Shown: positions 3,366-62,690 of the stretch, piece after piece
Layout of the letters: every line of letters starts with the position of its first letter
Numbering within the stretch: the stretch's first letter is position 1
Assembly: GCF_006345805.1 (NCBI RefSeq)
Contig: NC_043007.1
Coordinates: forward strand, 52,204,001 to 52,268,000
Length of the DNA stretch: 64,000 bases
Direction: 5' to 3'
DNA from: Octopus sinensis
Lineage: Eukaryota
The notes under the pieces: model-generated
Database searches by the model: none
Told to the model about the DNA's origin: nothing
The model's input: only the letters and a program-made list of their open reading frames with translations
Made by a program: the position numbers and the translations under genes

Positions 3366-3419
3366 ACATATAACCCATGCTAGCATGGAAAGCGGACGTT
3401 AAATGATGATGATGATGAT

Positions 3420-3694: not shown

Positions 3695-3770
3695 CATATA
3701 TATACATATAAGTATATACACATATATATATACATATATATACATATACATATATAGATATATCTATCTC
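3420..3770. repeat. (TA)n/(TACA)n compound microsatellite
   Basis: Directly visible low-complexity tract. Confidence 0.95.
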
Positions 3771-4799
3771 TCTGACCTCACACGTCAGCATGTTCATGGA
3801 ACAAATAGTCAGAAGGAAACTAATCACCTTCCTTGAAGAAAATGACTTGCTGCCCGACACCCAACATGGTTTCCGACCAGGAAGAAGCTGCTTAACTCAG
3901 CTCCTACAACACTATGACTGGGTGCTGAAATGACTGCTCAACCACTCAAATGTGGAAGTGATATATCTCGACTTTGCAAAGGCCTTTGATAAAGTCGATC
4001 ATGGAATGATATGTCACAAACTGCGTGATCTTGGCATAGTTGGAAAATTGGGAGAATGGCTTCATGACTTTCTGAAGGATAGAAGTCAGGTGGTAGTAGC
4101 CACTTCCATTAACACGCAAATAGTGAGCGGTGTTCTGCAGGGCACTGTTTTGGGACCACTACTGTTCATAATGGCCCTCTCAGACATGCCCTCAGCCACG
4201 CATAGGGCCACGATCACAAGTTATGCAGATGATACAAAAGTTTCACAGGCAATACAGAACCCTGAAGACACTAAGCACCTGCAATGTGAGCTGGACAAAA
4301 TATACAAGTGGGCTGAAAAGAATAGCATGCAGTTCAATGCTGAAAAGTTTCAAGTTTTATGCTATCAGCATGCAAAACTAAATGCAATACCCAATGAATA
4401 CACTGGACCTGGAGGGATTGCAATCCCAGAGGCACAATCAGTGCGTGACCTGGGTATTTACATGAGTGATGACGCAACCTTTCATGTACATGTTGCTAAA
4501 TTGGCAATGAAATGTAGACGGCTGGCCAGATGGATTCTTAGAACCTTTAGAACAAGAGACCAAGAAACCATGATGGTCCTCTGGAGGACACTTGTTCTAA
4601 GCCACTTTGACTATTGCTCTCAGCTATGGTCACCATCCAGTGTCAAGTTGATCACAGAACTGGAGGCGATCCAACGAAGCTACATGAAGAAAATAGCCTC
4701 TGTGCAGCATATAAGCTACTGGGAAAGACTCAAGAGATTAAAACTCTATTCCTTGTCCCAAACTTTGGCATCGAGACTTACACAAATGCCAGAACTGGA
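3771..4799 (+). mobile_element. CR1/L2-type LINE reverse transcriptase fragment (defective)
   Basis: Translates LTSHVS...[15 protein letters not shown]...K*LL...IYLDFAKAFDKVDH...QGTVLGPLLF...SYADDTK...VRDLGI...YCSQLWSP; one in-frame TGA near 3931 and an apparent internal deletion near 4753. Confidence 0.93.
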
Positions 4800-9774: not shown

Positions 9775-10369
9775 CCCCAAGGTTTTGCCTTTCATTCTTT
9801 CGAGGTTGATAAAATAAGTACCAGTTGAACACTGGAGTCAACTGAATTTACTTAGCCCCTACCTGTCAAACCTGCTGGCCTTGTATCAAAATTTGAAATC
9901 ATTATTAGGTGGTGAATTGGCAGAATTGTTAACATACTGACAAAATGCTTAGTGGCATTTTGTTCAGCTTTATGTTCTGAGTTCAAATTCCACTTAGGTC
10001 AACTTTACTTTTCAGCCTTTCGAGGTCAGTAAAATAAGTACTAGTTAACCACAAGGGTTGATGTAATTGACTAGCCCCTCCCCAAAATTTCAGGCCATGT
10101 ACCTTATAGTAGAAAGAATTATTATTATTATTATTATTATAATACAGTAATCCTTTGTCGTATCACGGTTCACCTATCACAGTTTATTATTTAAGCTTAC
10201 ATTGATTACTCTGTGGTGTTGTTTTGCATTTATAATAAAATAAATATATACAAATTACAAATATATATATATCTCCTTCTTCCCTTAGCGTCCAATAATA
10301 CTTTATTTGTTCCACGTCCTTGCGTTGTTGTTTTTTTGTTTTTGTTTTCTTGTTTGGATTAACTTTATA

Positions 10370-10431
<62 letters not shown>

Positions 10432-10975
10432 TCAGTACTGTCTCTACTTTGTGGATTTTAACCTATCGCGGGGGGATGGGGTTGGAACATAACACCTGTG
10501 ATTGTTGAGGGATTACTATATTATTATTATTATTATTATTAAGGCAGTGAGCTGGTAGAATTGTTAGCATGCTGGGCAAGATGCTTAGCGGCTTTTCATC
10601 TGCCCTTATGATCTGAATTCAAATTCAGCTGAGGTCAACTTTGCCTTTCATCCTTTTGGGAGTCAATAAATTAAGTACCAGTTGAGCACTGGGGTTGATG
10701 CAATTGACTTGTCCCTCTCCTCAAATTTCAAGCCTTGTACCTATAGTAGAAAGGATTATTATTATTATTGTTAAGGCAGCAAGCTGACAGAACCATTAGG
10801 GTAACAAGTAAAATGCTTTACATTCTGACTTCAAATTCTACTGTGGTTGACTTTGCCCTTCATCCTTTTGGGGTCAATAAAATAAGTATCAGTTGAGTAC
10901 TGGGGTCAATTTAATCAACTTACTCCCTCCCACCAAACTTGCAAGCATTGTGCCAAACTTTGAAACTATTATTAT
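9775..10975 (+). mobile_element. Cluster of four head-to-tail tRNA-derived SINEs (family B) with (ATT)n tails
   Basis: Repeated GGCAGAATTGTTAGC (A-box-like)...GAGTTCAAATTC (B-box-like)...ACTTTGCCTTTCATCCTTT...AAGTACCAGTTGAG at about 9775, 9905, 10540 and 10775. Confidence 0.85.
10145..10518. mobile_element. pogo/Tigger-like MITE
   Basis: Degenerate TIRs CAGTAATCC.../...GGGATTACTA with TA on both flanks; sits in the (ATT)n tail between SINE copies. Confidence 0.55.
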
Positions 10976-13517
10976 TATCATTGTCATCATCATATCTGAA
11001 GGACTTGTATTAAATCTGAGCAGATAGTTGTGATGGAATGGTTTGATATACAGGCAAAATGAATAAAGAGCACAAGAGAAAAATAAATACTTGATTTATT
11101 GGAAATAACCAAAGATGAGTCAGTGACTAGCAAACAAAACGGACAGATAACACTACCATATTTATTGGTTGGCAACCTCACCTATATGTAAAGGCAGCAG
11201 TTTTGTGTTATGTAGCTGTGGCTCTTTCTCTCACAACGCTAAGAGATGAAGAGTGGAGATGTAGAACTGCCAGATGTGAATGGAGTTAAAGCAACAAGTG
11301 TAGTAGAAGTAGTGGTGGTCATTGTCATAGTGGTAGTAATACTAATAGTGGTGGTGGTGGTGGTAGTAATACAGGTGTTATTGGTAGTGTGTCCTTCACT
11401 GATTATAGCAATGGAACCTCAACACAGCACAGTTGCTCCTTGTATTGAAGCAGATGTAACAACAACAATGGTGGTGATGATAAGGAGAAGGAGGTGAAGG
11501 ATGAGTGGGAAACATAATGTGGTGACTGTGTCCAGGACTTATCTTAAGATATTACAGAAATCAAATATATAAGTCTCTCTTCAAACACACACACACTCTA
11601 CAATATATTCAGTTTTTTTGTTGTTTTTTTTCGTGTGTAAATGGTTTCCTTTATTCTTAGATTAAGATAATCATATCATCTATACAATTTATGCACATAC
11701 ACACACACACAAGTATTTGAGGAAATGCATAGATATATTGTTAACTACATTACATAAAGAAGTTCTCAGACACAACAACATTTGTAGTTGCAGTAGTGGT
11801 AGCAGCAGTAGTATTAATAAATCAATGACTAAGTGTTGTATATGAAAAGATTATTTATCACAACTACTTTATAAAATAGACTGTGTGCCATACCTCAAAG
11901 CAGTGAGATTATGTACACACATTTGATTGTTTTGCTTTCATAAGTATTTTGGAGAGGTCACTCCAATGGAGGTCTACAATGTCTCTGATTATACCATAAA
12001 CATACTAAAGAATACGCAAATGAAATCATTAGAAGCTACAGCTGAAAGACTGTCAACAGAGATCACATTTGCCTGACTGCAAGTCATACAAAATCATTAG
12101 AAAGACAGTCAACAAATTGATGTAACATAGAATATTAATATAACAAAACAAAAAGTAGTAGATGGACATAATGTTACACACATCAAGAATACAGACATGT
12201 GTCTGCTAGTGGTGATGGTAGTGGTGCAGAATAAATTCATATAAAATTGTTGAAAACATGATGGTGGTGGTGGTGATGATGATGTTGATAAATTCTAACA
12301 TTGACAAAACCACAAATTTCAGAGCAGGGAGTAGAGGGAGGGAGTGTTTACCAACCTCAGTATTTTATGGTTATGCTAGCATGGAAGGCAGACATAAAAC
12401 GATGATGATAATGAGTAAGATGACAGGCTAAATTGATCTCAGTAGGATTTAAATTCAAAATGTAAACAGATGTTTACAATGGGGGTGCCCAGGCATGGCT
12501 GCAGCTCTTGAGCTGAAACTAGCAAAAAAGTTAGATGTATTAAAATACCACCAGACCACATGAGTCATCTTGAAATGTAACACCTGGTTTTAATGACTTC
12601 CACATTAAAGACAACCAATGGCCTGAAGACAATGGTACATCTGGTGAGATTCCTCAGTTTCTCTTTACCGAATTCCAGTCAAGGCTTGGACTGACCCAGA
12701 TTTATTTTGCAAGTCATTTACCCAAGGTGCCATACACTAAAATTGCACCCAGAGACATTTGGTTGTTAAATAAACTTCTTAACCACTCAGTTATGAGTGC
12801 TTGCACTATAAATGTAAATAAAATCAAACAGAAAATGTAAAACATTTCATGTTTCCTTCATTTATTAATTACTTAATGTGGGATCTAATGATGGGGGCTC
12901 TAACAGATCATGCAAAACTGCTAGAAATAGCAACCAAATTATCTCTTACAGCAGGAAGGAAACATTAGACAATATAATTGTAAATATAGAAAAAGACAAA
13001 TTGATGTAGATTTTGTAAAGTGATTGACCAAATGCAAGAGTTTGCTAAAGGATAGGGATTTGCTAATTCCCAATTTGATATAAGACATGTGTTCCCTTTT
13101 ACCCAACTCCCAATCTTTTCCAATCCTCAAATAATAACGCCAAATAATAATTGGAACAGTTCTAGAGTGTTTAAAATAAGTAGGTAGACAACGCACACAA
13201 ACATGTATATACACATATATACATATGCACATAAATACACAAACATTTATACGCGCACACATGTTGATAAATAAAATTAGTTACGTTCATCCATTTAAAA
13301 AAATTGTTACCAATTCAACGTTAACTGTTAACATGTTTCTCATGGTTGGTTTGTTAAATTGATCTTCAATGACATCAGTGAGTTTTTTAGAGAGAGAGTA
13401 TTGTTTAGGGAGTAAAGAGTAAACACTCGAAGGAATTTGATATATATGCATGCGCGTACATACACACACAACATACATATAATATTATTTAGGAAGTAAG
13501 GAGTAATGGACACTTAC

Positions 13518-14876: not shown

Positions 14877-15778
14877 TGATGGGGTACCCAAAAGAAACCA
14901 GAATTTTGCAATATTATTTTATTCACTTGGTTTTACATGTTTACACTTTTATTGCCTTCAAAGCATTCTCCATTTGAAACAATACATCGGTCCAGAAACA
15001 GTTTCCATTATTCAAAGCTGTGCTGGAACTCTTGCAAAATGATGCTTTTTAACGCCTCTGTTGTTTTTTCTTCATCTCTTCCACATCTTCAAATTCCATA
15101 GTAACAGCTTTTCTCACCAGTGATGACCTTTGAAAAAAGGTTCAGATCAATTTCCAACTGTTCTTTCAGTTCACGACACACATTCAGTCATGACTTTTGA
15201 CCTCCTGTGAGCAAGCGAGGCACAAATTTTGCTGCAACTATTCTCATTCGCAATTCCTTGCTCAAAATTCGTTGGCAGGAGCTCCAGGACACACCAGTCA
15301 TATCAAAAAGTTTGTCAATTATTCAGAAGTGGTCCTCCAAGATCAGTTCATGAATTTTCATGATATTTCAATTCGTTCGGGAGGTCAACAGATGCCCTGA
15401 ACAAAGTTGGTTTTCAAACGACAAGTGACCATTCCTAAAGCATGAAAACCACTTGTAAACTTGTGTTTTGCTTTTGGCAGCATCCTTGTAAGCTGTTTGC
15501 AGCATGACAACTGTTTTGGTTGCGGTTTTCCCCAGCAAAAAACAGAATTTCATGGAAGCATGCTTTTCCTTTGTTTCAGCCATCACAAAAATTGATGAAC
15601 AAGGGAGAAGTACTATAAAACAAAGACACATTATGTGGCAGTACAACTGCAACTGATGCAGCTGGTCGGCAGATTGATGTCAGAGGGTTGCATCAAGCGG
15701 CTTTTAGCAATGAAAGCCTGAACTACAATGGGCTTGTCCCACAGAGAACGTTTCCAGTTACTTTTGGGTACCTCCTCG
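14877..15778 (-). mobile_element. Internally deleted mariner element
   Basis: TIRs (T)GATGGGGTACCCAAAAG / CTTTTGGGTACCTCCTCG with TA flanks; transposase N-terminus from ATG at 15583 (MAETKEKHASMKFCFLLGKTAT...VYKWF...) and C-terminus (W..F.DRCIVSNGECFEG); central catalytic region missing. Confidence 0.9.
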
Positions 15779-19059: not shown

Positions 19060-19830
19060 AACTATATGTTTGGACACTATATGGACACAGCAATTTATCC
19101 ATCAGGTTCAAAACATTATTAATGATAATCCTGGAAAATCAATGAAGGCTATTGCCAAAGAAACCTCAGAACTGCGGTACATGAGGGTATTAGATACAAG
19201 TCATATGTACAGAGGAGAGGCCAATTCGTGTCTACAAAGATACAAGAAAACTGTTTAATCTGTGCCCAACAGTTAACAAGATTAAAATCCCTCACAAACA
19301 TGGTATACTTTCATTCTTGCTTGATGAGAGAAACTTTGATCAAGACCAAAAGTCTAACAAGTGAAATGACAGTTATGTACAGATCCTTCTAATGTCCCCA
19401 GAGTGATACACACTAAGTTTCCATCAACAACTGTGATGGTTTTAGGAGTGATGAGTTACAAGCAACCTCACATCTTTCCATAGGGTCTTGGAATTAATGC
19501 TGCTGGATATGGTGAGTTTCTAGAGACAGTTTTTAAGACCTTGGTGGATGAAATACACAGTAGAAGGCCACACAAAGTTTTAACAAAACTTAGTATCTTC
19601 GCACAAAGCCTATATAACCCAAGAATGGCTGTTAGACAATCTTCACAATCTTGTAATACCAAAATTGTGGCATCCAAACTTGCCAGATTTATATCTTTTG
19701 GATTACTATGTTTGGAGCATTGGTGAAATATGGATTATCCAACAATCTCACAACACCATAACTTCATTGAAGGCCACCACTGCTCAGATAATGTCTGAAA
19801 TGATTAAAGTCCGTTTAGTGCAGGTATGTC
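19060..19830 (+). mobile_element. Decayed DD37D (maT)-type Tc1/mariner transposase
   Basis: Fragments FIHQVQNIINDNPGKSMKAIAK and WHPNLPDLYLLDYYVWS...HNTITSLKA...EAIIEA, with frameshifts. Confidence 0.75.
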
Positions 19831-19859
19831 AACTAACCTGGTCTGGCAGTGAAGCAATC

Positions 19860-20440
19860 ATTGAAGCTAAAAGCAGACCCGGCAAGCCAAGTGAGTCCAT
19901 AACCCATGGCCTATGCCAGGGGTGTAACCAGCCCACTTATGCATACTTTTCCTTCATTGGACACTAAACTCTGCTTGCGAAGACCTGTTGAGGCAAGTGA
20001 AATTGAAATTAAATTCGATGACTGGCATCCGTGCTAGTGGAGCGTTAAGAGCACCATCCGAGTGTGGTCGTTGCCAGAGCAGCTGACTAGTACCATTCAA
20101 GTGTGATCATTACCAGTGTTTCCCTACTGCCACGTGAAAAAGCATTCGAGTGAGGTTGTTGCCAGTGCTGCTAGACTGGCTCCTGTACAGCTGGCACGTA
20201 AAAAACACCATTTGAGCATGGCCGCTGCCAGTACCGCCTGGCTGGCCCTCGTGCTGGTGGCACATAAAAGCACCCACTACACTCTCAGAGTGGTTGGCAT
20301 TAGGAAGGGCATCCAGCTGTAGAAACTCTGCCAGATCAGATTGGAGCCTAGTGCAGCCATCTTGTTTACCAGTCCTCAGTTAAATCGTCCAACCCATGCT
20401 AGCATGGAAAGTGATCGTTAAATGATGATGATGATGATGA
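19860..20440 (+). mobile_element. Long SINE-like repeat with internal about 50-bp subrepeats and (ATG)n tail
   Basis: Repeated GCACCATTCGAGTGTG(G/A)TCGTTGCCAG-like units; the 3' end CCAACCCATGCTAGCATGGAAAG...TAAATGATGATG is shared with several other loci here. Confidence 0.65.
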
Positions 20441-23099
20441 TAATGAATGTTATAAGAGAGCTTCTGCACAAATTTATTAAAATACATTTGGTTTTTGTTA
20501 CATTAGAATGGTTTATTTCATTCCCAAATATGTCCTCAAATATCTCTGGCACCCTATATATATCTTACACATACATACATTTACTCTCTCTCATATACGT
20601 GCACGTGTGTGTGTAATATATATATATATATATATATATATACTGATTTGATAAGTGCCAACACACAAAACTCTTAGCTTGAGCTACTCTGTTGCTTCTG
20701 CTAAATACTAATAAAATAAAAATACTCATGATTTGAGTTCTATTTTTCCTGTTTGCATCACTAAACGTACACACACACACAAAGAGCTGAATGGACAATA
20801 CTATAAACTTCAAAAGTGTTGGAAATATTTAACAATCAAAAACCCTTGACCTTTTCTAGTAACAGCCTTTTACCAATCACAAATTGGCAAATGAATGAGA
20901 AAAATACACTATAAAATTATGTGTGTAAAGGGGCTGCAATTCCATTTTTAAGATAACAGTATTGACCAATGTTAACTACAAGAATTTAGTTGATATGCTC
21001 TTGAAGATCTAAAAATGTTGATATAAAAAGCAAAGGAATGAAGATAAGAGATAAATTTATAATCACAGGACATTATGCAAGGCCTAAGACACCAGAGTCT
21101 ACAACATGGTTTTTCTTACTCTATAGACGGCCTCAATCATGAATTAAACTTGTTACAGACTCCATGCCTAGAGGGCTTACTACCATTGCACAATGTGTGT
21201 GTGTGTAGAGAGAGAGATTCTCATAATACATGCTCCTACTCTAATGGTATTTCATTTGGAATTCAAGACTTAGAATTAAGAAAACTTTGTTCATACTTTT
21301 GTTAAACAATTGACCCATAAGATATTCTACATCCTTTGACACATTTCAGTATTCAAAAACCAGAGCTGGAAACTTTCAATTGTACACAGTAAAAATTCTT
21401 GTAAAATTCCTTCACCTTTTAATATAATAAATGTGAAAAGTAATTTGTGTGTGTCACACTTTGACCCCCTCTCTCACTATTCAATGACACTTCTACTATT
21501 CCTCATGCTGGGGTGAGAGTAATAGTAGGTATACAGATGGTGAGGGCAGTAGCAAAGACAGAGAGAGAAAGAGAAGGGGAGAAAGAGATACAAAGAAATT
21601 TAGGGAGAATCGATGTTTTATTAAAAGTGGTAGTGTTGATGGTGGCAGTGGGTGTAATAAGAGAGAGAGAGAAAAAGGGACTGAACTTTGAACCAGCATG
21701 CTGAACAATGATGGTAATGGGGTGATAGTAATAGTATGAGCTGTACTTGTGATGGAGGCGGAGGTGATAGTCAGGGATGACAGTGAGAGTAAGGGATGTG
21801 AAAGACAAGTGGTGGAGGGGAAGGTGCGTCAGAAGTCTGAATGGTGTATATGGCAGATGTGGTGGTGATGGTAGTGGTACAGTTGTTTATAATGCATATT
21901 TGCAATAAATTCCAAGTTGACAAATTATATCATTGTTTTAACGAAAATTGTTCATTGCTTGAAAAATATTGTTCAACTGTAATAAAATTTAATATGTACT
22001 CAATGCATGAAGTGTCATTGTTGGGCGCAAAGCCTAATGAAGAGCCTTCCACAGGAGATAGCTTAAAAGTCACCTGATAGGGTGGCTTAAGCCAGTCTAG
22101 TATAATTCCACACACATCTAGGGTACTTTATAAAAATATCAAATCACATCTAGACTGGTACTTTATTTCATCAAAGATGAAAGTTAACATCAGTGGCAGG
22201 ATTTGAACTCAGGCTGTAAAGAACCATAACTAAACATCACAAGCATTTTTGATTGATACTCTACTGATTCTTCTACCTGAATATATCAGTCTTGTTTTGT
22301 TACTTTTGTTTTACTTTGTTTTCAGTTGATGAAATACCATCATCAAAGTAGCACACAATTTTGTTTCTCTCCAAGACAAATGTCCATGTATAGCATAATT
22401 GAAATGACATCAACTACAAATGACATTGTTGTTGTTCTCTGTTATTTCCAGAAATAGTCACATGAATTTACTATTAACCACTTCTCTCTTTTGCTTTATT
22501 TATTGTTTCATAAGTTGAAGTTCTCTATTATAAAAACATTTTTCGTTTTAAATCTAGTTTTTTTTTCTTTTCTTCCAGGCAAAAATTTTACTTTCTAAGA
22601 CGTAAAATAGAAACAACAAACCTAACAAAATAGTTAATTTGAAGAACAGATTGAAATTTTAATCAAATTGAAAAGCTGTAGCGATAATTTTCAACCTAAT
22701 ATGGAAGGTTCTTTCAAGATGGTTAATTCTTCATTAAACTGCTCAGAAATACTAAAATAATAACTGATCAATTTCAAAATGAAGAATTAATTCTCAAATT
22801 GAAAAGCAAGTTGCAAAATAACAAAATGAAGTGGAGGAAATAATTGTGGATTTTCATTTCCGTTTTCTATAATAAAATTTTTTTTTTTTAATCCAGCAGC
22901 TAGAAGAAAAGGTGTACAGATTCTATGTAGAATCATCTTAGAGCTAGTTGCATAGTTTATGGGTGTGCAAGTATATATGTATTTGCATGCTTGTGTATCT
23001 ATGTATGTGTGTGTGCATGCGTATGCATATGTATGAGCATGTGTTTCCAATGTTAATATGATCTTAGATATTTTGCATATGGTAATGATAATACTTGTT

Positions 23100-23300
23100 T
23101 CAAATTTTGTTACAAGGCCAGCAATTTTAGGAGAAAGGGTTAGTCAATCACACAGGCCCCAGTGTTCAACTGATATTCATTTTATAAATCCCGAAAGGAT
23201 GAAAGCAAAGTCATCCTCAGTAGAATTTGAATTCAGAATGTAAAAAGCTGGTAGAAATGCTGCTAAGCATTTTGTCTGATGTTCTAACAATTCTGCCAGC
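23100..23300 (-). mobile_element. tRNA-derived SINE (family B)
   Basis: Reverse complement of the family-B consensus seen at 9905-10140. Confidence 0.75.
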
Positions 23301-24939
23301 TCATTGTTTTAATAATTACATTGTGCAACATGATTTTTGTCCTTGGGTAACAATTGTTATTTCCTATTTGCTTACCCCTAGGAACTATGAAAAATGGCTA
23401 TTTCCTTCAAACTTTACTTTTATTACATTTATTCAAGCCCCAAAGAATCCCTCTCAACACATGGCTATGATGCACTCCCACTACTACTGCTCTTGATCAG
23501 AGATGCACATATTGTCAGCCACTAAGAGACATGCTCAAGTGGTTAAGCTCAAGCAAATCTGTGGTATTGAGCAGAATATTTGCTATAACAATATTTCTGC
23601 TTCAGCAACCCAGCACTGAATCTGAAATGTAATGGAAAATAGGCCAGTTTCAAAAGCAAAGTTTGAAGAGAATAGTTGTCATTTCATTTGATTTTCAGAA
23701 TCTTCTCAAAAGAACGAAACTGTTTCCAAAGGGGCCAAGATTGATTAGAGAGTTGGCAAAAGAAGGTCTGGCCCAGAAAGGCAAGATATTAATAATTACT
23801 GGAAGAGTGCACAACAATAGAGTCTGTGTCTATATTGAGGCATGATTGCTGTTGTAGGCCCAAATCAGCCCTCATATTGCAGACCTTTAATCCGAAGTCA
23901 TTCAACCATAACTATACCATCTTTTTAAAGTCACAGGATAACTAGAACTACATTATCCATTGTGCCTTTCTTATTTTTAAGGCTGAAGGATGTGATTTGG
24001 GGGAGACTTGTTTGCTATGTCTAATACACAGAGGTTTTTACTTTATCTAAGTGAATGCAATAGCAGTAAGTGAATAATTAAAACTATCAGACTTTACTAT
24101 CAGTGGATGGAGTTAATTAAGTTTGATAAATTAAACTGAAACTGGATTTTGAATCATTTGTGAAATTAATTGTCAATAATGTCAATTACTATTTGACTAT
24201 TTATAGCCATGGTTTAATTTTGCTGTCAGCTATGAACTGGGTAGTAAAGGCTTGAGATGGCGTAGCTGTAGCATGTAGTGGTGAGCAACCACATGTGGCA
24301 GCAGTGGTGATAGATGGTTAGTTACCACATGGGGTGGCTGTGGTATCAGATGATGAGTTACCATATGGGTAGGCTACACTATTTGACCCAAACTCTATCA
24401 GCCTTTAAGAGTTTATTTTGTCTTCTTTTGTGCTCCAGCATAATCATGACCGATTGACCACAAGCAACTAAAGAGAAGAGAATTGATGGTTTGAAATATT
24501 ATCAGATAAGAATTTCTGATTGTTGTGATTTGTGAGCCGAGACCTTCAGAGTCAAACACAGATGATCGTGTAGTTCACTTCACGACTAAGTGGTTTGAGT
24601 TTTGATCACACCTTGAGTAAAGTTTACCACCAAACACTAGGTTTGACCCATGTCTTCAGAGTAAAACTTAGCAAAAGATACTTTGTGAAAGTTAATATGT
24701 TGTTGTTGAGTGGTTAGGATTAATATGGTCCTTGGGTGCTTTTAGTAATGTCCCCTCTGTTACAAGCATTAGGGGTCACTGGTCTGAGGATAACAACCTC
24801 ACTCATTCTCACAAGTCTCAGGGCTACTTACTGATGTCAAAAACAAACAAAAAAATTAATTAATTTACAAAAGTATTATAAACATAAATTTCACATCTTG
24901 AACTGCACTCCTACCAAAAAAAGTTTAAATAATAATAAT

Positions 24940-25370
24940 AATCATGGTTTCAAATTTTGGTACAAAGCCAGCAATTTCGCTGGAGGGGGTAAGTCAATTA
25001 CATCAACTCAAGTGCTCAACTGATACTTATTTTATTAACCCCAAGAGGATGAAAGGCAAAGTTGATCTTGGTGGAATTTGAACTCAGAACATAAAGATGG
25101 ATGATATGCCTCTAAGCATTTTGCCCGTGTGCTAATGATTCTGCCAGCTAATAATAACAGTCCTTCCTACTATTAGCACAAGGCCTGAAATTTTAGGGAG
25201 AGTGGGGGAAGAGTCAATTACATCGACTCAGTGCTTGACTGGTATTTGTTTTATTGATCCTGAAAGGATGAAAGGCAAAGTCAACCTCAGCAGGATTTTG
25301 ATGGGATTTGAATGCAAAATAAGAGCCAGAACAAATACTACAAGACATTTTGTCCAATGCTCTAGCAATC
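24940..25370 (-). mobile_element. Two tandem family-B SINEs
   Basis: Two consecutive copies of AAGGCCTGAAATTT...GGATGAAAGGCAAAGT...ATTTGAACTCAGAAC joined at (AAT)n. Confidence 0.8.
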
Positions 25371-36849: not shown

Positions 36850-37640
36850 CAATAATAATAATAATAATCCTTTTTACTATAGGCACAAGGCCTGAAATTT
36901 TGGGAGAGGGAGTCAGTTGATTAACCTGAATGCTAAACTGGTACATATTTCATCAATCCCAAAAGGATGAAAGAGGCAAAGCCAACTTCGGCGGCATTTG
37001 AACTCAGAACAAAAAGATGGATAAAATGCCGCTAAGCATTCTGACTAGTGTGCTAATGATTCTGCCAGTTTGTTGCAATAATAACAACAGCAACAATAAC
37101 AATAATAATAATAGAAATAATAATAATGATAGATGTTTCTGATTTAGGTACAAAACCAGCAATCTTGTGGAAAGGAGTTAGTTAATGTCATCAACCCAGT
37201 ATTTGACTGGTGTCTTATTGAGCCTGGAAGGATAGAAGGCAATTAAAGGGAGAATAAGTTTATAATTGTCAAGAAACTGTAGAAACTGCAAGTGAAGATT
37301 GGGGAGGAATGAAACAAACAGTTTTTCTCTAGAATATTCAAAGAAATACATGAGTAAAAACTTTGAAAAATAATTATAAAGCATTCCCATTTTCATTTTT
37401 GGGTTTTGAAATTAATTGATTCACTGATTGCAATTATATAAAAATTACTAAAGGTGACACAAGGCCACAGAAGTGTGTGGAGTCAGAGGGCTGACCAGTT
37501 TATTTTGCAGGTTTTCATAAAAACCTAGCACAAAGATGAATGGCAAAGTCCACTCCAGCAGGAACTGAACTCAGAATATAAAGTAAGAGACATGAATAAA
37601 CACTACATGCCATTTTAACCACTGCTCTACCAATTCTGCC
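36850..37640 (-). mobile_element. Three family-B SINE copies/fragments
   Basis: Family-B motifs at about 36870-37075, 37130-37250 and 37510-37640. Confidence 0.7.
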
Positions 37641-46569: not shown

Positions 46570-49500
46570 ATAATAATTAATTCTTTTATTAGCCACAAGG
46601 GCTGACAAAAATTAATTATCACATAAAGGGAGAAAACAGGACGAAAGGTTACAAAGGGTTTTGTCCGTTTGTGAAAAAATCCGAGTAAAAACAGTTTAAC
46701 AACGAAAGATTATAACAATGAAAAATTCCCAATAGGGGGAGGCGCTTCGAAAGGTTCCTGGTGGAAACAAACCCATAAAAGCCAACGGGAGCCTGGTCAA
46801 AAGGGGGGTAGAGAGCCCCTTTCTCCTTTTGTAATACTTTTTTAAATCACAGGTGTAACCTCAGAATGGCTCCTTTCACACTGGCCATTCTTGCGACATT
46901 TATCCACCTTTTATTAAACTTGCTATCGGATAGCACTTCCCTCTCTACTCTCACCTTCCTTTACAAGTGAAACTTGAAAAAGTTGATGAGATCTGGGCCA
47001 AAGAGGAAAGTGTCTGACCATAGCCCTTTCAAATGGGTCCACCATACCACCTCTTTCGCTACAGCCACTAGGCAAAGGAAAACTGCCTTGCCCTCCTGGT
47101 TAAAGGAGGTTGGCGGAGCAATCCTCACTATGGATTCAGCTGATAGCCGGATCCGTCCTATACGCGACAGTAGCTGTTTGACATAAACCCATAGTTCTGC
47201 AATACTCGGACACTCGACGAGTGCGTGTAGAATGGTTTCGTCGTCCTGGCAGCACCTCGGGCAGGCCCTGCTGACGGCACTTCTGTGCCAGTAGAGTTAT
47301 CTCGAACAGGCAGAGCCCCTCGGTAACACTGCCAGGCGAAGGACCTCTGGAAATTATCCATTGGCCCCGGCCTGAAAATCCTCCTGAACAGACTGCTCAG
47401 CTCTTTATCGTCACTGCCTAGAGTTTCCCCGAGAATGTCGTCGCACTTTTCTTCCACTAACCTTCTAAAGAACGCTAGGGTGGAACTACTACCGATCACA
47501 TTGCCCACTTGGCGGAGGGCAGAGAGAGCTTGATGGCACTCGAGGTGCCAAGTACCCTTTCTCGGTCTACGTTTGATCCAGGCCTGCAGCTCTGTCAAAG
47601 AGACGAGGTGCGGAAAGTCGCGTCTTACAAAAGATGACCACACCTGTTCACCGTCTAGGAAACGCTTGAGATGTCATAGCCTGAGCGCATGTCTGCGCAT
47701 CAGTAACCATGGTATGCCAAGGCCTCCATTCAGCAATCGTTGACAGCAGATGGATCGCCTGACAAGTGGTACCTGACCCTTCCACAAAAAGTCAAAGAGC
47801 AAGCGTACCAGCTTGGCCAACCACCAGTCGGGACAAGGGACGACGGACAAGCGGTAATAGATGACGGATGTGATGTATGCATTCACCACCTCCACTCGAC
47901 CTTTCAGGGACAGCTTCCTCTCAGCCCAATTCTGGGTGAGATTGGCCACTCTGCTCGTCACTTCTTCCCAGTTTTTATCCACCGAACCAGACCCCGAGCA
48001 GTTTAACGGATCCGTCTGTCCAGCGCCCTACGACGCTGTTGGACGGCATGGAGCTGCCTCTCCAGGTGCCTAGTTGCAAGCCCACGGACTTTCCCATGTT
48101 AATTTTTGTTCCTGTCACCGCTTTGTATTCGTTCAGCGTCTCGCCGATCAGGTCAATGTCCCTATAGCTCGACACCATCACAGTGACGACATCGGCATGG
48201 GCAGACATGCTGTTTCCACCTCCTAGATCGCGCGGGATACCCCCTCAAAGCCTCCAACTTGCGCAATAATGGCTCGAGAGTCAATACGTACAAGAGAGAG
48301 GAGAGAGGGCATCCTTGGCGGACCGAACGTGAGATGTCAAACAGCTCTGAAAGGTGACCATTCACCCGTATTACCGAGCAGATGTTGCTGTATAAAGCAG
48401 CGATCCACCCACGGAAGACTGGACTGAAGCCGGCTGCCTTGAGAACAGCTGCCAGGTATCGATGGTCGATCCTATTGAAGGCTTTACTTTGATCTAAATT
48501 GATCAAAGCCCCACCCGCGACAGCGTCGTTACCCACCCTCCCTATGGTGTAGCGCATGAAATGGAGATTAATGTGTATCGACCTGGTCGGCACAGCGCAT
48601 GTCTGCGCCTTGCCAACCAGCTTACCCACGACGAGCGCCAATCTCTTGGCCAAAATCTTCAGCTCTGCATTGAGCAGAGTGATGGGCCGAAAGTTCCCTA
48701 TAATGACCCCCTTGTTTGGGTCCTTTCTCAGCAAAGCCACCACTCCTCAACAAACAAAAGCAGGAATTCTCCCATTTTGCTGCCAGTTGCAGTAGACGTT
48801 TGCCAAGAGGCCCGCAAACAAGTCTGGCATTGAAGTGTAAAGCTCGTAGAGCAGACAATCTACCTCTCGTGCAGCTTTTCATTGCTTCCTCCACTTCCCA
48901 GGCAGATATTGGCCTTTCGCAGCACTCTGCCTCACTGTCCGAGAGTTGCGGTAGACCGTCCAGGTACACACCGAAGTCTGTACCGTTCGCCCCAAACAGT
49001 TGAGCTAAGTGCTGCTAAAACACCACACACATCTGCTTCGGCTCAGAAACCTCGCGCCTGTTCTGGTCCACCAAAGACCGAATGGTCGCTTTGTTGCCCC
49101 ACTTTGCCTCTGCCACACGGGCCCATCGAGCGGCCTTAGTCCCCTCCCCGCTTAGCGAACACACCTTAGCTCTGGCAACGCAGCCTTCGTGTTTGGCGTC
49201 AAAGTGTTGGTCGAGGGCCAACCTAGCCGCCAACACGTCAGTTGCGATGCCTGTCTCAAGAGCCTCGTCTAGTTTTCTAACTAATGCCACTTCGTTTTCC
49301 TACGTTCTACAGCTAGAGCCTTACTAAACCTAATCAACTCTGCCCTAATTGCTCTCTTGAGGGCAAACCACCAGTTGTTGTTGATGATTGCCCCCGTGAG
49401 CTCCCGTTTAACTAATAAACTAATCCGGTCTCTGTAGGCTTTGCACACCATTGACGACGCGTTCAGCTTCCAGTAGCCGGGTTCCTGTCTATGTAGCCTA

Positions 49501-49623
49501 TCTAATTCGACCGTACAGATCACGAATTTGTGGTCTGTGTAGTCGACTAGGTGGAAGTGTGGACACCCTATGCTGTCCTTATCCGCTGGCCTACAGAACA
49601 CTCTATCTAAGTACGATCTAGAC
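46570..49623 (-). mobile_element. 5'-truncated Tx1/L1-clade LINE (endonuclease end, RT, C-terminal Cys-rich region), defective
   Basis: SYLDRV...TDHKFV...GYWKLNAS (APE endonuclease end); NFRPITLLNAELKIL, LDQSKAFNRIDH and VRQGCPLS.LLYVL (RT); YADD degenerated to HADV; WQCYRGALPVRD then a Cys-rich motif; 3' UTR with AATAAA at about 46585-46590 and an (ATT)-like tail; multiple frameshifts. Confidence 0.92.
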
Positions 49624-49639
49624 AATCCGATGCGATTAG

Positions 49640-49860
49640 TCCAAAATAATACCAGTCAATGTACACCACTTGCCCAGAAGGAATGTAAGAGACACCAAGA
49701 CAATATAACAAGGCTTGTCCATTGGACACTTTGCAACAAGTTTGGACTTGACAGCAAAAAATTGGTACAACCATAAACCTGAAAGCATCACTGAAAATGA
49801 TAATGCAAAGATCCTGTGGGATTTTATGATTCAGTGCGACCATAAGATAGAAAATAGGTA
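49640..49860 (+). mobile_element. R4/Dong-like (RLE-type) non-LTR retrotransposon C-terminal fragment
   Basis: SQCTPLAQKECKRHQDNITRLVHWTLC / WYNHKPESITENDNAKILWDFMIQCDHKIENR matches the zinc-knuckle-to-RLE linker pattern (C..LA..EY..RHD.....HW.LC; KILWDF.IQ.D). Confidence 0.75.
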
Positions 49861-50749: not shown

Positions 50750-50791
50750 CGCTATAATATATTTAATATATTATATATCATTATATATAAA

Positions 50792-50822
<31 letters not shown>

Positions 50823-51084
50823 CATTATCATTCAATGTCTTTTCCATGCTGGCATGGGTTGGATGGTTTGATAGGAACTGACCAGCTGAAGGGATGTTTA
50901 GACTCCAGGTCTGTTTTGGCATGGTTTCTACGGCTGGATATCCTTCCTAACACCAACCACTTTACAGAGTGTACTGGGTACTTTTATGCAGCACTGGCAC
51001 AGGTGCCTTTTATGTGACAACAGCACCTATGAGCCTGCTAGATTAGGGATGCTCAGCTGGAGAGGGTTGCAGGGGATGAGCCTC

Positions 51085-52198: not shown

Positions 52199-52283
52199 AC
52201 ACTTTCTGTGCCCTATTAGTATTTGCAAAGGGAAGTCATCCTGCCCAACTTCAACCTCACATGATACACACAAACCCAGGTTT
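52199..52283 (-). mobile_element. Diverged partial copy of the 353-bp retrozyme-like unit
   Basis: ACACTTTCTGTGCCCTATTAGTATTTGCAAAGGGAAGTCATCCTGCCCAACTTCAACC...ATGATACACAC aligns by eye to about 54651-54735; the ribozyme part is eroded (AAACCCAGGTTTG vs GGACTCGAGTTTC). Confidence 0.75.
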
Positions 52284-52344
52284 GTTTTTGATTTTGTCAA
52301 ACTACACAGTATAGTAGGATCAGTTGGGCACTGTCTGTGAGAAA

Positions 52345-53073
52345 TTCACTCTGACAGAAATCTAGAAATGACATGCTGTACTGCTTGGCATTCGTCCAGA
52401 AGCTCCAACACGACATTTCAGAGTGTTTGGGTGTCAATCTGAGGACATGTACCGAGAGTGATAAAAATCAAACAAACATCCAGTGAACATCATGGTGTTT
52501 GGAGTGATTACTAATGATGGTGACATTATGCCTCCATTCATCTCACATGGCCTCAGACTCAACGTGGAGGCCTACATCAAGTGCCTGGAGGAGGTAGTGC
52601 TGTCCTGGGTCAAGAGAGTGGTTGCTGGAAGACCCTATGTCTGGCAACAGGACTCTGCACCATGCCACGCAAGCAGGAGAACCCAGTCATGGCTGTCAGA
52701 CAATTTCTGCAACCACATCACCCCTAACATCTCACCACTCAACTCCCCAGACTGCAACCCCCTTGATTATCATATGTGGGATGCAGTTGAGCAAGAGACC
52801 AACAAAACTCCTTGTAACACCAAAGATGAACTGAAGGCAAGGATTATGGCAGAATTTACCAACTTAAACGAGACAGTCCAGAAGAGTTGCAGGAGATTCT
52901 GAAGTCATCTGGAGGCCATGGTTGAAGCCAATGGCGATTTTATTGAATAAATTTACTCTTTAGTATTTAAAAATATTTTTATGTAATTTTGGTAATTGCA
53001 TCTGTTAAAATGAGATGTCAGTGTTATTTTCATTTATCCGTAATTTAGATGACAGTTTATTCACTGCACCCTG
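52345..53073 (+). mobile_element. Internally deleted DD37D (maT) transposon
   Basis: ORF 52483-52902: VMVFGVI...YVWQQDSAPCH...SPDCNPLDY with 37 residues counted between the last two Asp; N-terminal HAVLLGIR fragment upstream; right end ...CACCCTG at 53073. Confidence 0.9.
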
Positions 53074-54511: not shown

Positions 54512-54555
<44 letters not shown>

Positions 54556-54717
54556 CGTATTTTTGCCATTTCAATATGGCTAACCCCTAAAGGTGGATGC
54601 TACTGTAGTTTTTAGCCCCAGGAGGACACACTCCTCCAGCTGGCCATAGACACACTTTCTGTGTCCTGTCAGTATCTGCAAAGGGAAGTCATCCTTCCCG
54701 TCTTCAACTTATGATAC

Positions 54718-54760
54718 ACACGGACTCGAGTTTCGAGGTATTGACCTCTCGTCAGCGTGT
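54718..54760 (-). ncRNA. Minimal type-I hammerhead ribozyme, copy 1
   Basis: Minus strand reads ACACG-CUGACGA-GAGGU(CAAU)ACCUC-GAAAC(UCGA)GUC-CGUGU: 5-bp stem I, canonical core, 5-bp stem II, short stem III with palindromic ACUCGAGU, GUC triplet; predicted cleavage between 54723 and 54722. Confidence 0.92.
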
Positions 54761-55070
54761 GACAATCATAGTTGTCGGCGAGAATTAGATTTCCTTCACA
54801 AATACTTATACTTTTTCCAGCGTCCACTGTCGCTGATATTGAAAAAGTGAAATCAAACAATGATAAATATCAAAGTGAGTTATATACAGTAGCGGTAACA
54901 CATCGTGACGTATTTTTGCCATTTCAATATGGCTAACCCCTAAGGGTGGATGCTACTGTAGTTTTTAGCCCCAGGAGGACACACTCCTCCAGCTGGCCAT
55001 AGACACACTTTCTGTGTCCTGTCAGTATCTGCAAAGGGAAGTCATCCTTCCCGTCTTCAACTTATGATAC

Positions 55071-55113
55071 ACACGGACTCGAGTTTCGAGGTATTGACCT
55101 CTCGTCAGCGTGT
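55071..55113 (-). ncRNA. Minimal type-I hammerhead ribozyme, copy 2
   Basis: Identical to 54718-54760, 353 nt away. Confidence 0.92.
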
Positions 55114-55422
55114 GACAATCATAGTTGTCGGCGAGAATTAGATTTCCTTCACAAATACTTATACTTTTTCCAGCGTCCACTGTCGCTGATATTGAAAAAG
55201 TGAAATCAAACAATGATAAATATCAAAGTGAGTTATATACAGTAGCGGTAACACATCGTGACGTATTTTTGCCATTTCAATATGGCTAACCCCTAAGGGT
55301 GGATGCTACTGTAGTTTTTAGCCCCAGGAGGACACACTCCTCCAGCTGGCCATAGACACACTTTCTGTGTCCTGTCAGTATCTGCAAAGGGAGGTCATCC
55401 TTCCCGTCTTCAACTTATGATA

Positions 55423-57774
<2,352 letters not shown>

Positions 57775-61378: not shown

Positions 61379-62269
61379 CACACACACATAGAGAGAGAGA
61401 GAGAGATAACAAGAACAGAAGACAAAAGAGAAGAAATGGTCAACCTTGGAACAAACAAAATAGATTTTATGTCGTGCCAAATGGATGGCTTGAGTAAGCC
61501 TTCATTAATGCATGCCTATATATGTTTGTGTGTATGAGTGTAAATATGTGAAGGGATGTACAATTGGGTCTACAAACTAGTAAAAGATACTCAATACAGA
61601 AGTGTATGTACTTCTTGTAGTTCTCAGATTATTTGCTGTTGTAAAATTGGTTTATGATACATGTGGCATGGTGTTTATGATGTATATAACATGGTGTTTA
61701 TAGCAAAATATTTGAGTAATTAGTCATTGAATGCAAAATATAACTACTGAAAATAATTGAAAATAGTATAGAAGTCTATATAAGCCAGCCATACACCAAA
61801 ATCTCATCTAAGTAATAACAATGTTCAACTCAAACCATTTTCATTATTGGAGTTCTAAAAATGAAGAATGGGCAGCATTTTTAATGAAACACCAAGATAT
61901 GAATAAATAATGCATAAACTGTAAACCAGAGACAAAGCAAAATATTTCCATCACTGAAAATAATGGAAAATACTACAGAAGTATATATAGGCCAGCCAGA
62001 CAGAAGAAGCCACCAGCTTCCAGTCCAGCCATGTGCTCCAAGAAGTTCTTTCTGATGCATCTGGAGCTGCTGAAATGTAAATCTTACTGCTAACAATATC
62101 ATGTAACCCACCTTGATCAATAGCAGCCCAGTTTCCAGAAGCCATCTTGGGCTTCCTGTATCTCTTTATTCAGTTAACTGAGCCTGAATGAGCTAAGTTT
62201 CTGTAAGAAACCTGCAAAACTAAGGTATATGGAGCTGATCCAAATTGTTTAAATAATAATAATAATAAT

Positions 62270-62683
62270 TCTTTCGCCTAGAGGCACAAGGCCTGAAATT
62301 TTGGGGGAAGGGGCAAGTCGATTACATTGACCCTAGTACTCAACTGGTACTTAATTTATCAACTCTGAAAGGATAAAAGGCAAAGTCGACCTTGGCAGAA
62401 TTTGAACTCAGAACGTAGCAGCTGTTTAAATAATAATAATGATGATGATGGTGATAATGATGATAATAATAATAATACTTTCTACTATAGGCACAAGGCC
62501 TGAAATATTAGAGGAGGGTCTAAGCCAATTACATCAACACCAGTGTTTCACTAGTACTTAATTTATTGACCCCAAAAGGATGAAAGGCAAACTTCTCCTT
62601 GGCAGAATTTGAACTCAGAACATAAAGACAGATAAAATGATGCTAAGCATTTTGCCCAAGATGCTAACGATCCTGCCAGCTTA

Positions 62684-62690
<7 letters not shown>
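62270..62690 (-). mobile_element. Two tandem family-B SINEs
   Basis: Two copies separated by an (AAT)/(GAT)n spacer. Confidence 0.85.

What the first reader, a model, noticed from the sequence alone, without database searches (positions are those of the whole stretch)
54552..55422. Young tandem 353-bp repeat carrying an intact hammerhead ribozyme in each unit: candidate retrozyme / circRNA system
Seen: about 2.5 almost identical 353-bp units between (TA)n tracts, with no transposase or RT, and an exact minimal type-I hammerhead on the minus strand of each full unit. Established: small non-autonomous 'non-LTR retrozymes' are tandem arrays of few-hundred-nt monomers with type-I hammerheads; they are transcribed as multimers, self-cleave to monomers and circularise, and are thought to use Penelope-like RT. 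Inference: this is a recently active member that yields a 353-nt linear or circular RNA. I do not know of a description of this family, but cannot confirm novelty.
Basis: partly seen in the sequence, partly recalled or inferred. Interest (0 to 1): 0.92.

Follow-up and report, generated by a model that had tools for sequence, protein, structure and literature searches.

The report
Young hammerhead-ribozyme tandem repeat (retrozyme)
This is a recent 2.5-copy insertion of a 353-bp non-coding repeat carrying a self-cleaving hammerhead ribozyme, inserted in a (TA)n microsatellite of what is probably a cephalopod genome; it fits a mobile-element class ("non-LTR retrozymes") already described in other animals, so it is a new family of a known kind.

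Summary
Window 54552-55422 is a 353-bp repeat in 2.47 copies, with two substitutions in total. It lies between a pure (TA)18.5 tract and a long degenerate (TA/CA)n tract. Each of the two complete units carries a full-length type-I hammerhead on the minus strand (54761-54717 and 55114-55070). The hammerhead scores 32.2 bits in Rfam, just under the cut-off of 34. My own descriptor finds these two sites and none in 300 shuffles of the window.

Every sequence-testable feature of animal non-LTR retrozymes is met:
- monomer size
- one canonical type-I hammerhead per unit
- 43% GC
- no coding capacity
- a strongly self-paired RNA (z = -6)

A second, decayed copy lies 2.25 kb away (52199-52299), so the family has inserted more than once.

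The hammerhead is not "minimal". It has the canonical metazoan architecture with a 2-bp helix III and a palindromic tetraloop, and it probably cleaves best as a dimer.

I could not test genome-wide copy number, transcription, cleavage or circularisation. No related sequence exists in any searchable collection. The host is probably an octopod. No Penelope-like element was found in the window.

Verdict: a new member of a known kind, of moderate-to-low interest.

The parts
54552..55422 (-). Retrozyme-type array: 2.47 head-to-tail copies of a 353-bp unit. On the + strand the units are 54552-54904, 54905-55257 and the partial 55258-55422. The RNA sense is the minus strand.
   Evidence: TRF; unit comparison with 2 substitutions; self-BLAST at 99.4%
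55070..55114 (-). Hammerhead ribozyme copy 2 (type I). Helix I 55114-55109 pairs with 55075-55070. Core CUGACGA is 55108-55102. Helix II GAGGU/ACCUC is 55101-55097 and 55092-55088, with loop CAAU. GAAA is 55087-55084. Helix III is A-U and C-G with tetraloop UCGA (55084-55077). C17 is 55076; cleavage falls between 55076 and 55075.
   Evidence: Rfam RF00163, 32.2 bits, model 1-45/45; descriptor scan; cleavage index
54717..54761 (-). Hammerhead ribozyme copy 1, identical in sequence to copy 2; cleavage falls between 54723 and 54722.
54723..55075 (-). The one complete 353-nt monomer that double self-cleavage of a minus-strand transcript would release. It would carry a 5'-OH C and a 3' cyclic-phosphate GUC end.
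   Evidence: Follows from the two cleavage sites. Circular MFE -117.0 kcal/mol, z = -6.05 against 200 dinucleotide shuffles, 63% of bases paired
54897..54914 (-). Predicted small hairpin (monomer nt 162-179, AAUACGU-CACG-AUGUGUU). The left end of the array (54552) corresponds to nt 171, inside this loop, in the next unit. It is a candidate internal start site for reverse transcription.
   Evidence: Boundary and structure. The parallel with initiation in an AC-rich stem-loop of a Penelope-like element comes from PMC11167929. Inference only.
54515..54551 (.). Pure (TA)18.5 tract abutting the RNA-sense 3' end of the array. It is part of the microsatellite target, so no target-site duplication can be read.
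55420..55746 (.). (TA)n grading into (TACA)n/(CA)n, abutting the RNA-sense 5' end of the array. The compound microsatellite continues to about 57750.
52199..52299 (-). Older, truncated copy of the same family, about 85% identical over the best 73 bp. It covers the hammerhead 3' two-thirds (decayed, helix II lost) and the first 71 nt after the cleavage site.
   Evidence: blastn E 1e-17; repeat families D9 and D11; local alignment score 54 against a shuffle maximum of 21.5

Best explanation
The array is a young insertion of a non-autonomous, non-coding retroelement of the animal non-LTR retrozyme type. The mechanism below is inferred from the anatomy here and from the published class.

1. A tandem donor locus is transcribed on the hammerhead strand (minus in this window).
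2. [quoted passage not shown] Helix III has only 2 bp closed by the palindromic tetraloop UCGA. Two ribozymes of a multimeric transcript can therefore pair ACUCGAGU with ACUCGAGU to form an 8-bp helix III, and cleavage is probably most efficient in this dimeric form.
3. A host RtcB-type tRNA ligase circularises the monomer. The product is a compact, rod-like or branched RNA with the ribozyme at the tip of a long extension of helix I.
4. A reverse transcriptase and endonuclease supplied in trans, most likely from a Penelope-like element, nicks AT-rich DNA, here a (TA)n microsatellite. It then copies the RNA for more than one unit length and leaves a head-to-tail array.

At this locus cDNA synthesis would have started in a small hairpin loop at monomer nt 171. 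It would have run for 871 nt and ended 6-9 nt short of the ribozyme cleavage site. That end point fits run-off at a self-cleaved 5' end.

Shown here: the repeat, the intact ribozyme motifs, the absence of coding capacity, the strong predicted structure, the microsatellite context and a second older copy. Inferred: transcription, cleavage, circularisation, the mobilising enzyme and the reading of the boundaries.
For: - Repeat geometry and near-identity.
- A full-length hammerhead with every core position intact: C3 U4 G5 A6 C7 G8 A9, G12 A13 A14, A15.1-U16.1, C17, G10.1-C11.1 and C1.1-G2.1 (sequence). There were 0 descriptor hits in 300 shuffles.
- The architecture matches the published 'canonical' metazoan type-I form: helix I of 6 bp, helix II of 4 bp, and helix III of 1-2 bp with a 2-4 nt palindromic loop that works as a dimer in tandem repeats (PMC4209133; PMC7229834).
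- Cofolding two ribozyme segments gives the double hammerhead with an 8-bp intermolecular helix III as the minimum-energy structure, at -58.1 against -53.4 kcal/mol for two separate molecules.
- The monomer has 42.8% GC. The circular RNA has MFE z = -6.05, and the active ribozyme fold is compatible with the rest of the structure at a cost of 5.9 kcal/mol.
- No ORF exceeds 66 codons, and none of the six-frame products has any homologue.
- The class definition and life cycle come from PMC7229834. The link to Penelope-like elements comes from bioRxiv 10.64898/2026.07.22.740005.
- Penelope-like elements are reported to prefer (TA)n and AT-rich targets, and to initiate internally at a stem-loop without homology to the target.
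- A second, diverged copy lies at 52199-52299.
- The array is by far the youngest repeat in the window, at 99.4% identity against 67-82% for all other dispersed repeats.
Against: - No evidence of transcription, cleavage or circles could be obtained.
- Only one other copy of the family was seen, and it lies close by in the same orientation. Genome-wide dispersal is therefore unproven.
- No Penelope-like RT or GIY-YIG sequence was found in the window.
- The Rfam score is 1.8 bits under the curated cut-off.
- In the nearest-neighbour model an alternative local hairpin (CUCGA-AAC-UCGAG and neighbours) is 5.9 kcal/mol more stable than the active core.
- The boundary reading rests on one locus. A boundary within 9 nt of the cleavage site is expected by chance about 5% of the time, and many positions lie in hairpin loops.
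- The in vitro Penelope-like element study found that ribozyme cleavage is not needed for insertion.
Confidence: 0.72

Rival explanations
1. An ordinary DNA-level tandem duplication or small satellite. A single hammerhead-bearing dispersed repeat was amplified locally by slippage or unequal crossing-over next to a microsatellite, with no multimeric cDNA and no role for an RNA circle.
For: - Only 2.5 copies are present, and the locus is a recombination- and slippage-prone microsatellite.
- No external copies could be retrieved.
Against: - The array ends are clean junctions with (TA)n and are not flanked by unit-related sequence.
- The RNA-sense 5' end falls 6-9 nt from the ribozyme cleavage site.
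- An older copy elsewhere in the window shows the family moves.
- Short arrays are the norm for retrozymes: 75% of families have at most 7 units.
Confidence: 0.12
2. A remnant of an autonomous Penelope-like element. The 353-bp units would be tandem pseudo-LTR pieces left after the RT/EN body was lost or never copied, not a separate non-autonomous family.
For: - Penelope-like elements carry hammerheads in their pseudo-LTRs, insert as partial tandems and prefer AT-rich or (TA)n targets.
- Retrozymes are phylogenetically close to pseudo-LTRs.
Against: - There is no RT or GIY-YIG coding sequence in or next to the array, or anywhere in the window.
- The ribozyme has the canonical retrozyme-type architecture, not the atypical minimal form described for pseudo-LTRs.
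- The unit repeats at 353 bp, not at several kilobases.
Confidence: 0.1
3. An assembly artefact: one monomer expanded, or a larger array collapsed, by the assembler.
For: Near-identical tandem copies beside long microsatellites are hard to assemble.
Against: - The copies differ at two positions, each private to one unit.
- The junctions are in perfect register with no indels.
- This rival would change the copy number, not the nature of the element.
Confidence: 0.04
4. A chance hammerhead-like motif in a repeat with no ribozyme function.
For: The Rfam score is below the gathering threshold.
Against: - The match is full-length with all invariant core positions and three helices in place.
- There were 0 hits in 300 shuffled windows.
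- E is 4e-4 for the whole window against all 4227 families.
- Helix I continues into a long stem.
Confidence: 0.02

Closest known systems
Non-LTR retrozymes of invertebrates, e.g. the Mytilus galloprovincialis 350-390-bp repeats, clone Mg353 (Cervera & de la Pena 2020, PMC7229834)
   Same: - Both come from molluscs, if the host here is a cephalopod.
- The monomer length is the same (353 bp).
- Both are short head-to-tail arrays with low GC and no ORF.
- Both have one type-I hammerhead per unit, with a 2-bp helix III closed by a palindromic tetraloop (ACGCGCGU in the mussel, ACUCGAGU here).
- Both are predicted to form a strongly self-paired RNA.
   Different: - There is no sequence similarity outside the ribozyme architecture: best local alignment is 23 nt.
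- Helix II, loop 2 and helix I sequences differ.
- Expression and circularity are shown for the mussel and untested here.
Newt/axolotl satellite-2-type retrozymes, Rtz_331 and Rtz_353 (PMC7229834; first described by Epstein & Gall 1987, as cited there)
   Same: - Both are 330-350-bp tandem units.
- Both have a type-I hammerhead with a weak helix III and a palindromic loop, which is dimer-dependent for cleavage in the amphibians.
   Different: [quoted passage not shown]
- There is no sequence similarity.
- The helix III here has 2 bp, like Amex2 and the invertebrate ribozymes, not 1 bp.
Hammerheads in the pseudo-LTRs of Penelope-like elements (Cervera & de la Pena 2014, PMC4209133; Frangieh et al. 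2024, PMC11167929)
   Same: - Both carry a type-I hammerhead and have a tandem or partial-tandem genomic structure.
- Both insert at AT-rich or microsatellite targets.
- The array end here lies in a hairpin loop without homology to the target, which resembles the internal initiation described for the anole element.
   Different: - Those elements are several kilobases long and encode RT plus a GIY-YIG endonuclease; none is present here.
- Their ribozymes are mostly atypical minimal variants.
Plant LTR retrozymes (PMC4918200)
   Same: Both are non-autonomous, carry hammerheads, and have a proposed circular RNA intermediate.
   Different: The plant elements have type-III hammerheads inside LTRs, a PBS and PPT, 4-bp TSDs, 600-1000-nt RNAs and Gypsy-type mobilisation. 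None of these applies here.

Membership tests
Animal non-LTR retrozyme | Head-to-tail repeats with a monomer of about 150-450 bp | tested here: met
   353 bp x 2.47 copies; criterion from PMC7229834
Animal non-LTR retrozyme | One type-I hammerhead with an intact catalytic core in each complete monomer | tested here: met
   Two identical full-length motifs
Animal non-LTR retrozyme | Low GC content (<45-50%) | tested here: met
   42.8%
Animal non-LTR retrozyme | No LTRs and no protein-coding capacity | tested here: met
   The array is flanked directly by microsatellite. The longest open frame is 66 codons. The six-frame products have no homologues. PBS and PPT motifs were not searched for specifically.
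Animal non-LTR retrozyme | Monomer RNA predicted to be stable and highly self-paired | tested here: met
   Circular MFE -117 kcal/mol, z = -6.05, 63% of bases paired
Animal non-LTR retrozyme | Many copies dispersed in the genome | tested here: inconclusive
   One further decayed copy at 52199-52299. The host genome is not in any searchable collection.
Animal non-LTR retrozyme | Expressed as monomeric linear and circular RNA | not testable with these tools
   No transcriptome access
Animal non-LTR retrozyme | Co-occurrence with autonomous Penelope-like elements in the same genome | tested here: inconclusive
   None found in the 64-kb window. The literature reports such elements in Octopus spp. 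and the giant squid.
Hammerhead ribozyme, type I (Rfam RF00163) | Conserved core CUGANGA / GAAA / UH, three helices, helix I open | tested here: met
   Alignment; descriptor scan
Hammerhead ribozyme, type I (Rfam RF00163) | Reaches Rfam's curated gathering score (an operational cut-off, not a structural feature) | tested here: inconclusive
   32.2 bits against 34. Not reported at the gathering threshold. E is 4.2e-4 for the whole window.
Hammerhead ribozyme, type I (Rfam RF00163) | Self-cleavage at the predicted site | not testable with these tools
   Needs in vitro transcription
Autonomous Penelope-like element | ORF with a telomerase-like RT and a GIY-YIG endonuclease between pseudo-LTRs | tested here: not met
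   Pfam finds only two LINE-type RVT_1 fragments and a Mos1 HTH elsewhere in the window, and no GIY-YIG domain. The motif regex was negative.
Plant LTR retrozyme | Type-III hammerheads within LTRs, plus PBS and PPT | tested here: not met
   The best Rfam clan member is type I, and there are no LTRs
Viroid-like / deltavirus-like circular RNA replicon | Ribozymes in both polarities, RNA-only replication | tested here: not met
   A ribozyme is found on one strand only, and the sequence is integrated in chromosomal DNA

The most novel reading that the evidence does not exclude
The two ends of this young array may record the insertion mechanism. The RNA-sense 3' end lies in the loop of a small hairpin with no homology to the (TA)n target, as in the internal initiation shown in vitro for one Penelope-like element. 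The 5' end lies 6-9 nt from the hammerhead cleavage site. That would mean the template had been self-cleaved in vivo and the reverse transcriptase ran off that end. If all copies of the family show the same pattern, this would be the first genomic evidence for two things: that retrozymes use Penelope-type initiation, and that hammerhead cleavage defines the template end. In cephalopods the (TA)n-targeting Penelope-like elements reported in the literature are Naiads, which themselves lack hammerheads, so such elements could be the mobilisers.
Probability: 0.15. Interest if true: 0.55.

Novelty: new member of a known kind. Interest (0 to 1): 0.3.

Why it matters
Tandem repeats with type-I hammerheads are a documented source of abundant small circular RNAs in corals, mussels, amphibians and many other animals. 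I found no retrozyme family described for cephalopods in the searchable literature. The giant-squid genome paper only counts 235 Hammerhead_1 loci, and no paper holds this ribozyme sequence.

A copy this young, with two substitutions in 871 bp, suggests the family may still be active in its host. It also gives a clean substrate for three experiments:
- testing dimer-dependent cleavage;
- asking whether cephalopod tissues contain a 353-nt circular RNA;
- reading insertion junctions that older copies have lost.

There is also a practical point. The motif falls 1.8 bits below Rfam's gathering score, so standard genome annotation would miss the family.

Tried and rejected
**Searches for other copies, all empty**
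- The exact 33-nt ribozyme in viral, metagenome and prokaryotic genome collections.
- Relaxed ribozyme patterns.
- A 19-mer conserved between the young and old copies. It gave one hit in a bacterial MAG (L002), which is about what chance predicts for 19 bases in 596 Gb.
- blastn against plasmids, to exclude an engineered ribozyme cassette.

**Protein route to other assemblies**
- I concatenated the six longest open frames of the circularised unit into one query for the 5.8-billion-protein search, hoping that spurious ORFs called on other assemblies would lead to more copies. There were no hits.
- Exact look-ups of four unit ORFs found nothing on record.
- Exact look-ups of two transposon ORFs from the window, tried to identify the source assembly, also found nothing.

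**Comparisons and local checks**
- Alignment to the published coral, mussel and axolotl retrozyme clones found no homology outside the ribozyme.
- There are no tRNA genes in the window and no Pol III A/B boxes in the unit. A sense-strand TTTTT argues weakly against Pol III transcription.
- Apart from microsatellites, no inverted copy or 30-40-bp 'tail' of the unit lies near the array.
- All other Rfam matches in the window are microsatellite-driven microRNA look-alikes far below their cut-offs.

**A weak observation, kept only as a note**
Helix III in the old copy (ACCUGGGU) is still self-complementary, through one double change (U-A to C-G) and one wobble. That hints at selection for the dimeric helix. 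I do not rely on it, because the rest of that ribozyme is decayed and it is a single comparison.

Full report
**1. What is in the sequence**

Tandem Repeats Finder reports a 353-bp period, 2.5 copies, 99% matches and no indels at 54552-55422. A base-by-base comparison finds only two differences among the three copies, at 54591 and 55393.

The array is bounded on the left by a perfect (TA)18.5 tract (54515-54551). On the right, a (TA)n tract degrades into (TACA)n/(CA)n and continues, with interruptions, to about 57750. Self-BLAST of the window shows the array is by far its youngest repeat, at 99.4% identity. The dispersed SINE-like and other repeats are 67-82% identical to each other.

**2. The ribozyme**

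At Rfam's gathering thresholds the window has no match. At E-value thresholds, Hammerhead_1 (RF00163) matches the minus strand at 54761-54717 and 55114-55070. The match covers the whole model (1-45 of 45) at 32.2 bits against a cut-off of 34. E is 7.8e-6 for the 1.2-kb search and 4.2e-4 for the whole window against all 4227 families. Every other match is a microsatellite-driven microRNA look-alike far below its cut-off.

The sequence is CACACG-CUGACGA-GAGGU-CAAU-ACCUC-GAAA-C-UCGA-G-U-C / CGUGUG. All invariant core positions are present, with G10.1-C11.1, C15.2-G16.2 and a GUC cleavage triplet. Cleavage falls between 54723/54722 and 55076/55075.

A descriptor I wrote demanded the core and all three helices. 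It finds exactly these two sites in the window and none in 300 dinucleotide-preserving shuffles of the 64 kb. The motif is therefore real and not a chance match.

The partial third unit (55258-55422) stops 6-9 nt downstream of where the cleavage site would be, so it carries no ribozyme. A minus-strand transcript of this locus could release exactly one complete monomer (55075 down to 54723).

**3. Which kind of hammerhead**

In the literature, minimal hammerheads are the atypical variants found in the terminal repeats of Penelope-like elements. The 'canonical' metazoan type-I motif has a 6-bp helix I, a 4-bp helix II and a 1-2-bp helix III capped by a 2-4-nt palindromic loop, and it works as a dimer in tandem transcripts (PMC4209133).

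This motif is the canonical kind:
- Helix I has 6 bp, followed by a small internal loop (UGU opposite U). It then continues for about 30 more pairs, so the ribozyme sits at the tip of a long imperfect rod.
- Helix II has 4-5 bp.
- Helix III has 2 bp plus the palindromic tetraloop UCGA.

The 8-mer ACUCGAGU is self-complementary. Cofolding two ribozyme segments gives, as the minimum-energy structure, the double hammerhead with an 8-bp intermolecular helix III. Its energy is -58.1 kcal/mol, against -53.4 for two separate molecules. The mussel retrozyme clone has the analogous ACGCGCGU.

In the thermodynamic model a local alternative hairpin is 5.9 kcal/mol more stable than the active core in the circular monomer. 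That fits a ribozyme that is not constitutively active as a monomer. The model ignores tertiary contacts.

**4. The rest of the unit**

- The monomer has 42.8% GC.
- As a circle, the hammerhead-sense RNA folds to -117.0 kcal/mol, with z = -6.05 against 200 dinucleotide shuffles and 63% of bases paired. The antisense strand gives z = -5.1.
- No open frame exceeds 66 codons.
- A query made of all six long frames found no homologue among 5.8 billion proteins.
- There is no second ribozyme on either strand, no tRNA gene in the window and no Pol III box in the unit.

**5. A second copy**

At 52199-52299, 2.25 kb away and in the same orientation, lies a diverged fragment of the same family. It is 85% identical over 73 bp (blastn E 1e-17). 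It extends with gaps through the cleavage site into the ribozyme core, with an alignment score of 54 against a shuffle maximum of 21.5 (also families D9 and D11). Its ribozyme is decayed, with helix II lost. It abuts a mariner-like transposase fragment (52465-52899).

The two copies clearly differ in age, so the family has inserted or been copied at least twice. This argues against a one-off local duplication.

**6. Surroundings and host**

The window is 34.7% GC. It is rich in microsatellites and transposon debris:
- two LINE-type RT fragments (Pfam RVT_1)
- mariner/Mos1 fragments
- at least two SINE-like families

No GIY-YIG endonuclease or other sign of a Penelope-like element was found.

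The best named relative of the LINE RT at 3934-4827 is a protein of the octopod Argonauta hians, at 60% identity. The next named hits are about 45% identical. An unnamed metagenome contig gives 75%. I take the host to be a cephalopod, probably an octopod, with moderate confidence. No assembly of it seems to be in the searchable collections.

**7. Comparison with the known class**

Cervera and de la Pena (2020) define animal non-LTR retrozymes by these features:
- short tandem repeats of 150-450 bp;
- one type-I hammerhead per monomer;
- low GC;
- no LTR, PBS or PPT and no coding capacity;
- abundant 170-400-nt linear and circular RNAs that are highly self-paired;
- circularisation by a tRNA ligase;
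- probable mobilisation by Penelope-like elements.

They describe such repeats 'from molluscs to arthropods', including 350-390-bp mussel repeats. A 2026 preprint shows that retrozymes co-occur with Penelope-like elements and are related to their terminal repeats. It also reports that 75% of families have at most seven units per array.

Every criterion that sequence can test is met here. Copy number, expression and the presence of a mobilising element in the genome could not be tested. The unit has no sequence similarity to the published coral, mussel or axolotl clones outside the ribozyme architecture. That is expected, because these families are species-specific.

**8. Mechanism and the boundaries**

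The target, a (TA)n tract, agrees with what is reported for Penelope-like elements. Naiad and Neptune elements show a microsatellite bias, which also explains why no target-site duplication can be read. Penelope and Poseidon endonucleases prefer AT-rich DNA.

In the RNA sense, the 3' end of the array lies after monomer nt 171, in the CACG loop of a predicted 7-bp hairpin. It has no homology to the flanking TA repeat. [quoted passage not shown]

The RNA-sense 5' end lies 6-9 nt after the cleavage site. The uncertainty comes from UAU, which could belong either to the unit or to the microsatellite. A reverse transcriptase running off a self-cleaved 5' end would produce this result, whether the template was a linear multimer or a circle that opened during copying.

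Both readings are inference from one locus. A boundary that close to the cleavage site has roughly a 5% chance expectation. The PAc study also found that cleavage is dispensable for insertion in vitro.

**9. Rivals**

- Local DNA-level duplication, estimated probability about 0.12.
- A remnant of an autonomous Penelope-like element, about 0.10.
- An assembly artefact, about 0.04.
- A chance motif, about 0.02.

The evidence for and against each is given in the Rival explanations section.

**10. Verdict**

The element is a new family of a well-described kind of mobile element, in a host group where I found no published retrozyme description.

It would not surprise a specialist. Its value lies in its youth, its clean junctions, and the fact that standard Rfam annotation misses it. 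Interest 0.3.

Noticed in passing
window 55746-55990 (+); also 3384-3411 (-), 20263-20448, 50780-50988, 1541-1736: A SINE-like element of about 240 bp that starts with a (CAT)n run followed by TTTAAC(G/T)TCCG(C/T)T(T/A)TCCATG. One copy is inserted in the same compound microsatellite as the ribozyme array. The head motif occurs 3 times in the window against 0 expected, and the copies sit next to TA/CA microsatellites. Microsatellites seem to be insertion hot spots here.
   Followed up: partly
window 9784-10144, 10512-10994, 23083-23320, 24923-25298, 36851-37109, 62247-62689: A second dispersed repeat family with units of about 220 bp, often in tandem pairs, 70-82% identical to one another. Its translations give the recurring 'FHPFR(V/I)DK' ORF fragments. 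It is probably a tRNA-derived SINE, but I did not classify it.
   Followed up: no
window 52465-52899 (+), 19584-19964 (+), 15371-15679 (-): Mariner/Mos1-type transposase fragments. There is a Pfam HTH_48 hit at 15371-15679, and C-terminal DDE-region-like ORFs at the other two sites that got no Pfam hit. The fragment at 52465 lies directly beside the old retrozyme copy and may have truncated it.
   Followed up: partly
window 3712-4830 (+) and 46964-49655 (-): Two LINE-type reverse-transcriptase remnants (Pfam RVT_1, E about 1e-16). The best named relative of the first is a protein of the octopod Argonauta hians (60% identity). This is the only clue to the host.
   Followed up: partly
window 55999-57750: A very long (about 1.75 kb) degenerate (TA)n/(TACA)n microsatellite. 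It produces dozens of spurious sub-threshold mir-297, mir-466 and mir-3149 matches in Rfam E-value mode.
   Followed up: no
window 52276-52283 versus 54726-54733 and 55079-55086 (helix III): Helix III of the decayed copy reads ACCUGGGU where the young copies read ACUCGAGU. It is still self-complementary through a double change (U-A to C-G) and a wobble (C-G to U-G). This is a single-comparison hint that the dimeric helix III was under selection.
   Followed up: partly
window 54717-54761 and 55070-55114: The hammerhead scores 32.2 bits, 1.8 below Rfam's gathering score, so a default Rfam/Infernal annotation run reports nothing in this window. Counts of Hammerhead_1 loci in published cephalopod genomes may therefore miss families like this one.
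   Followed up: yes
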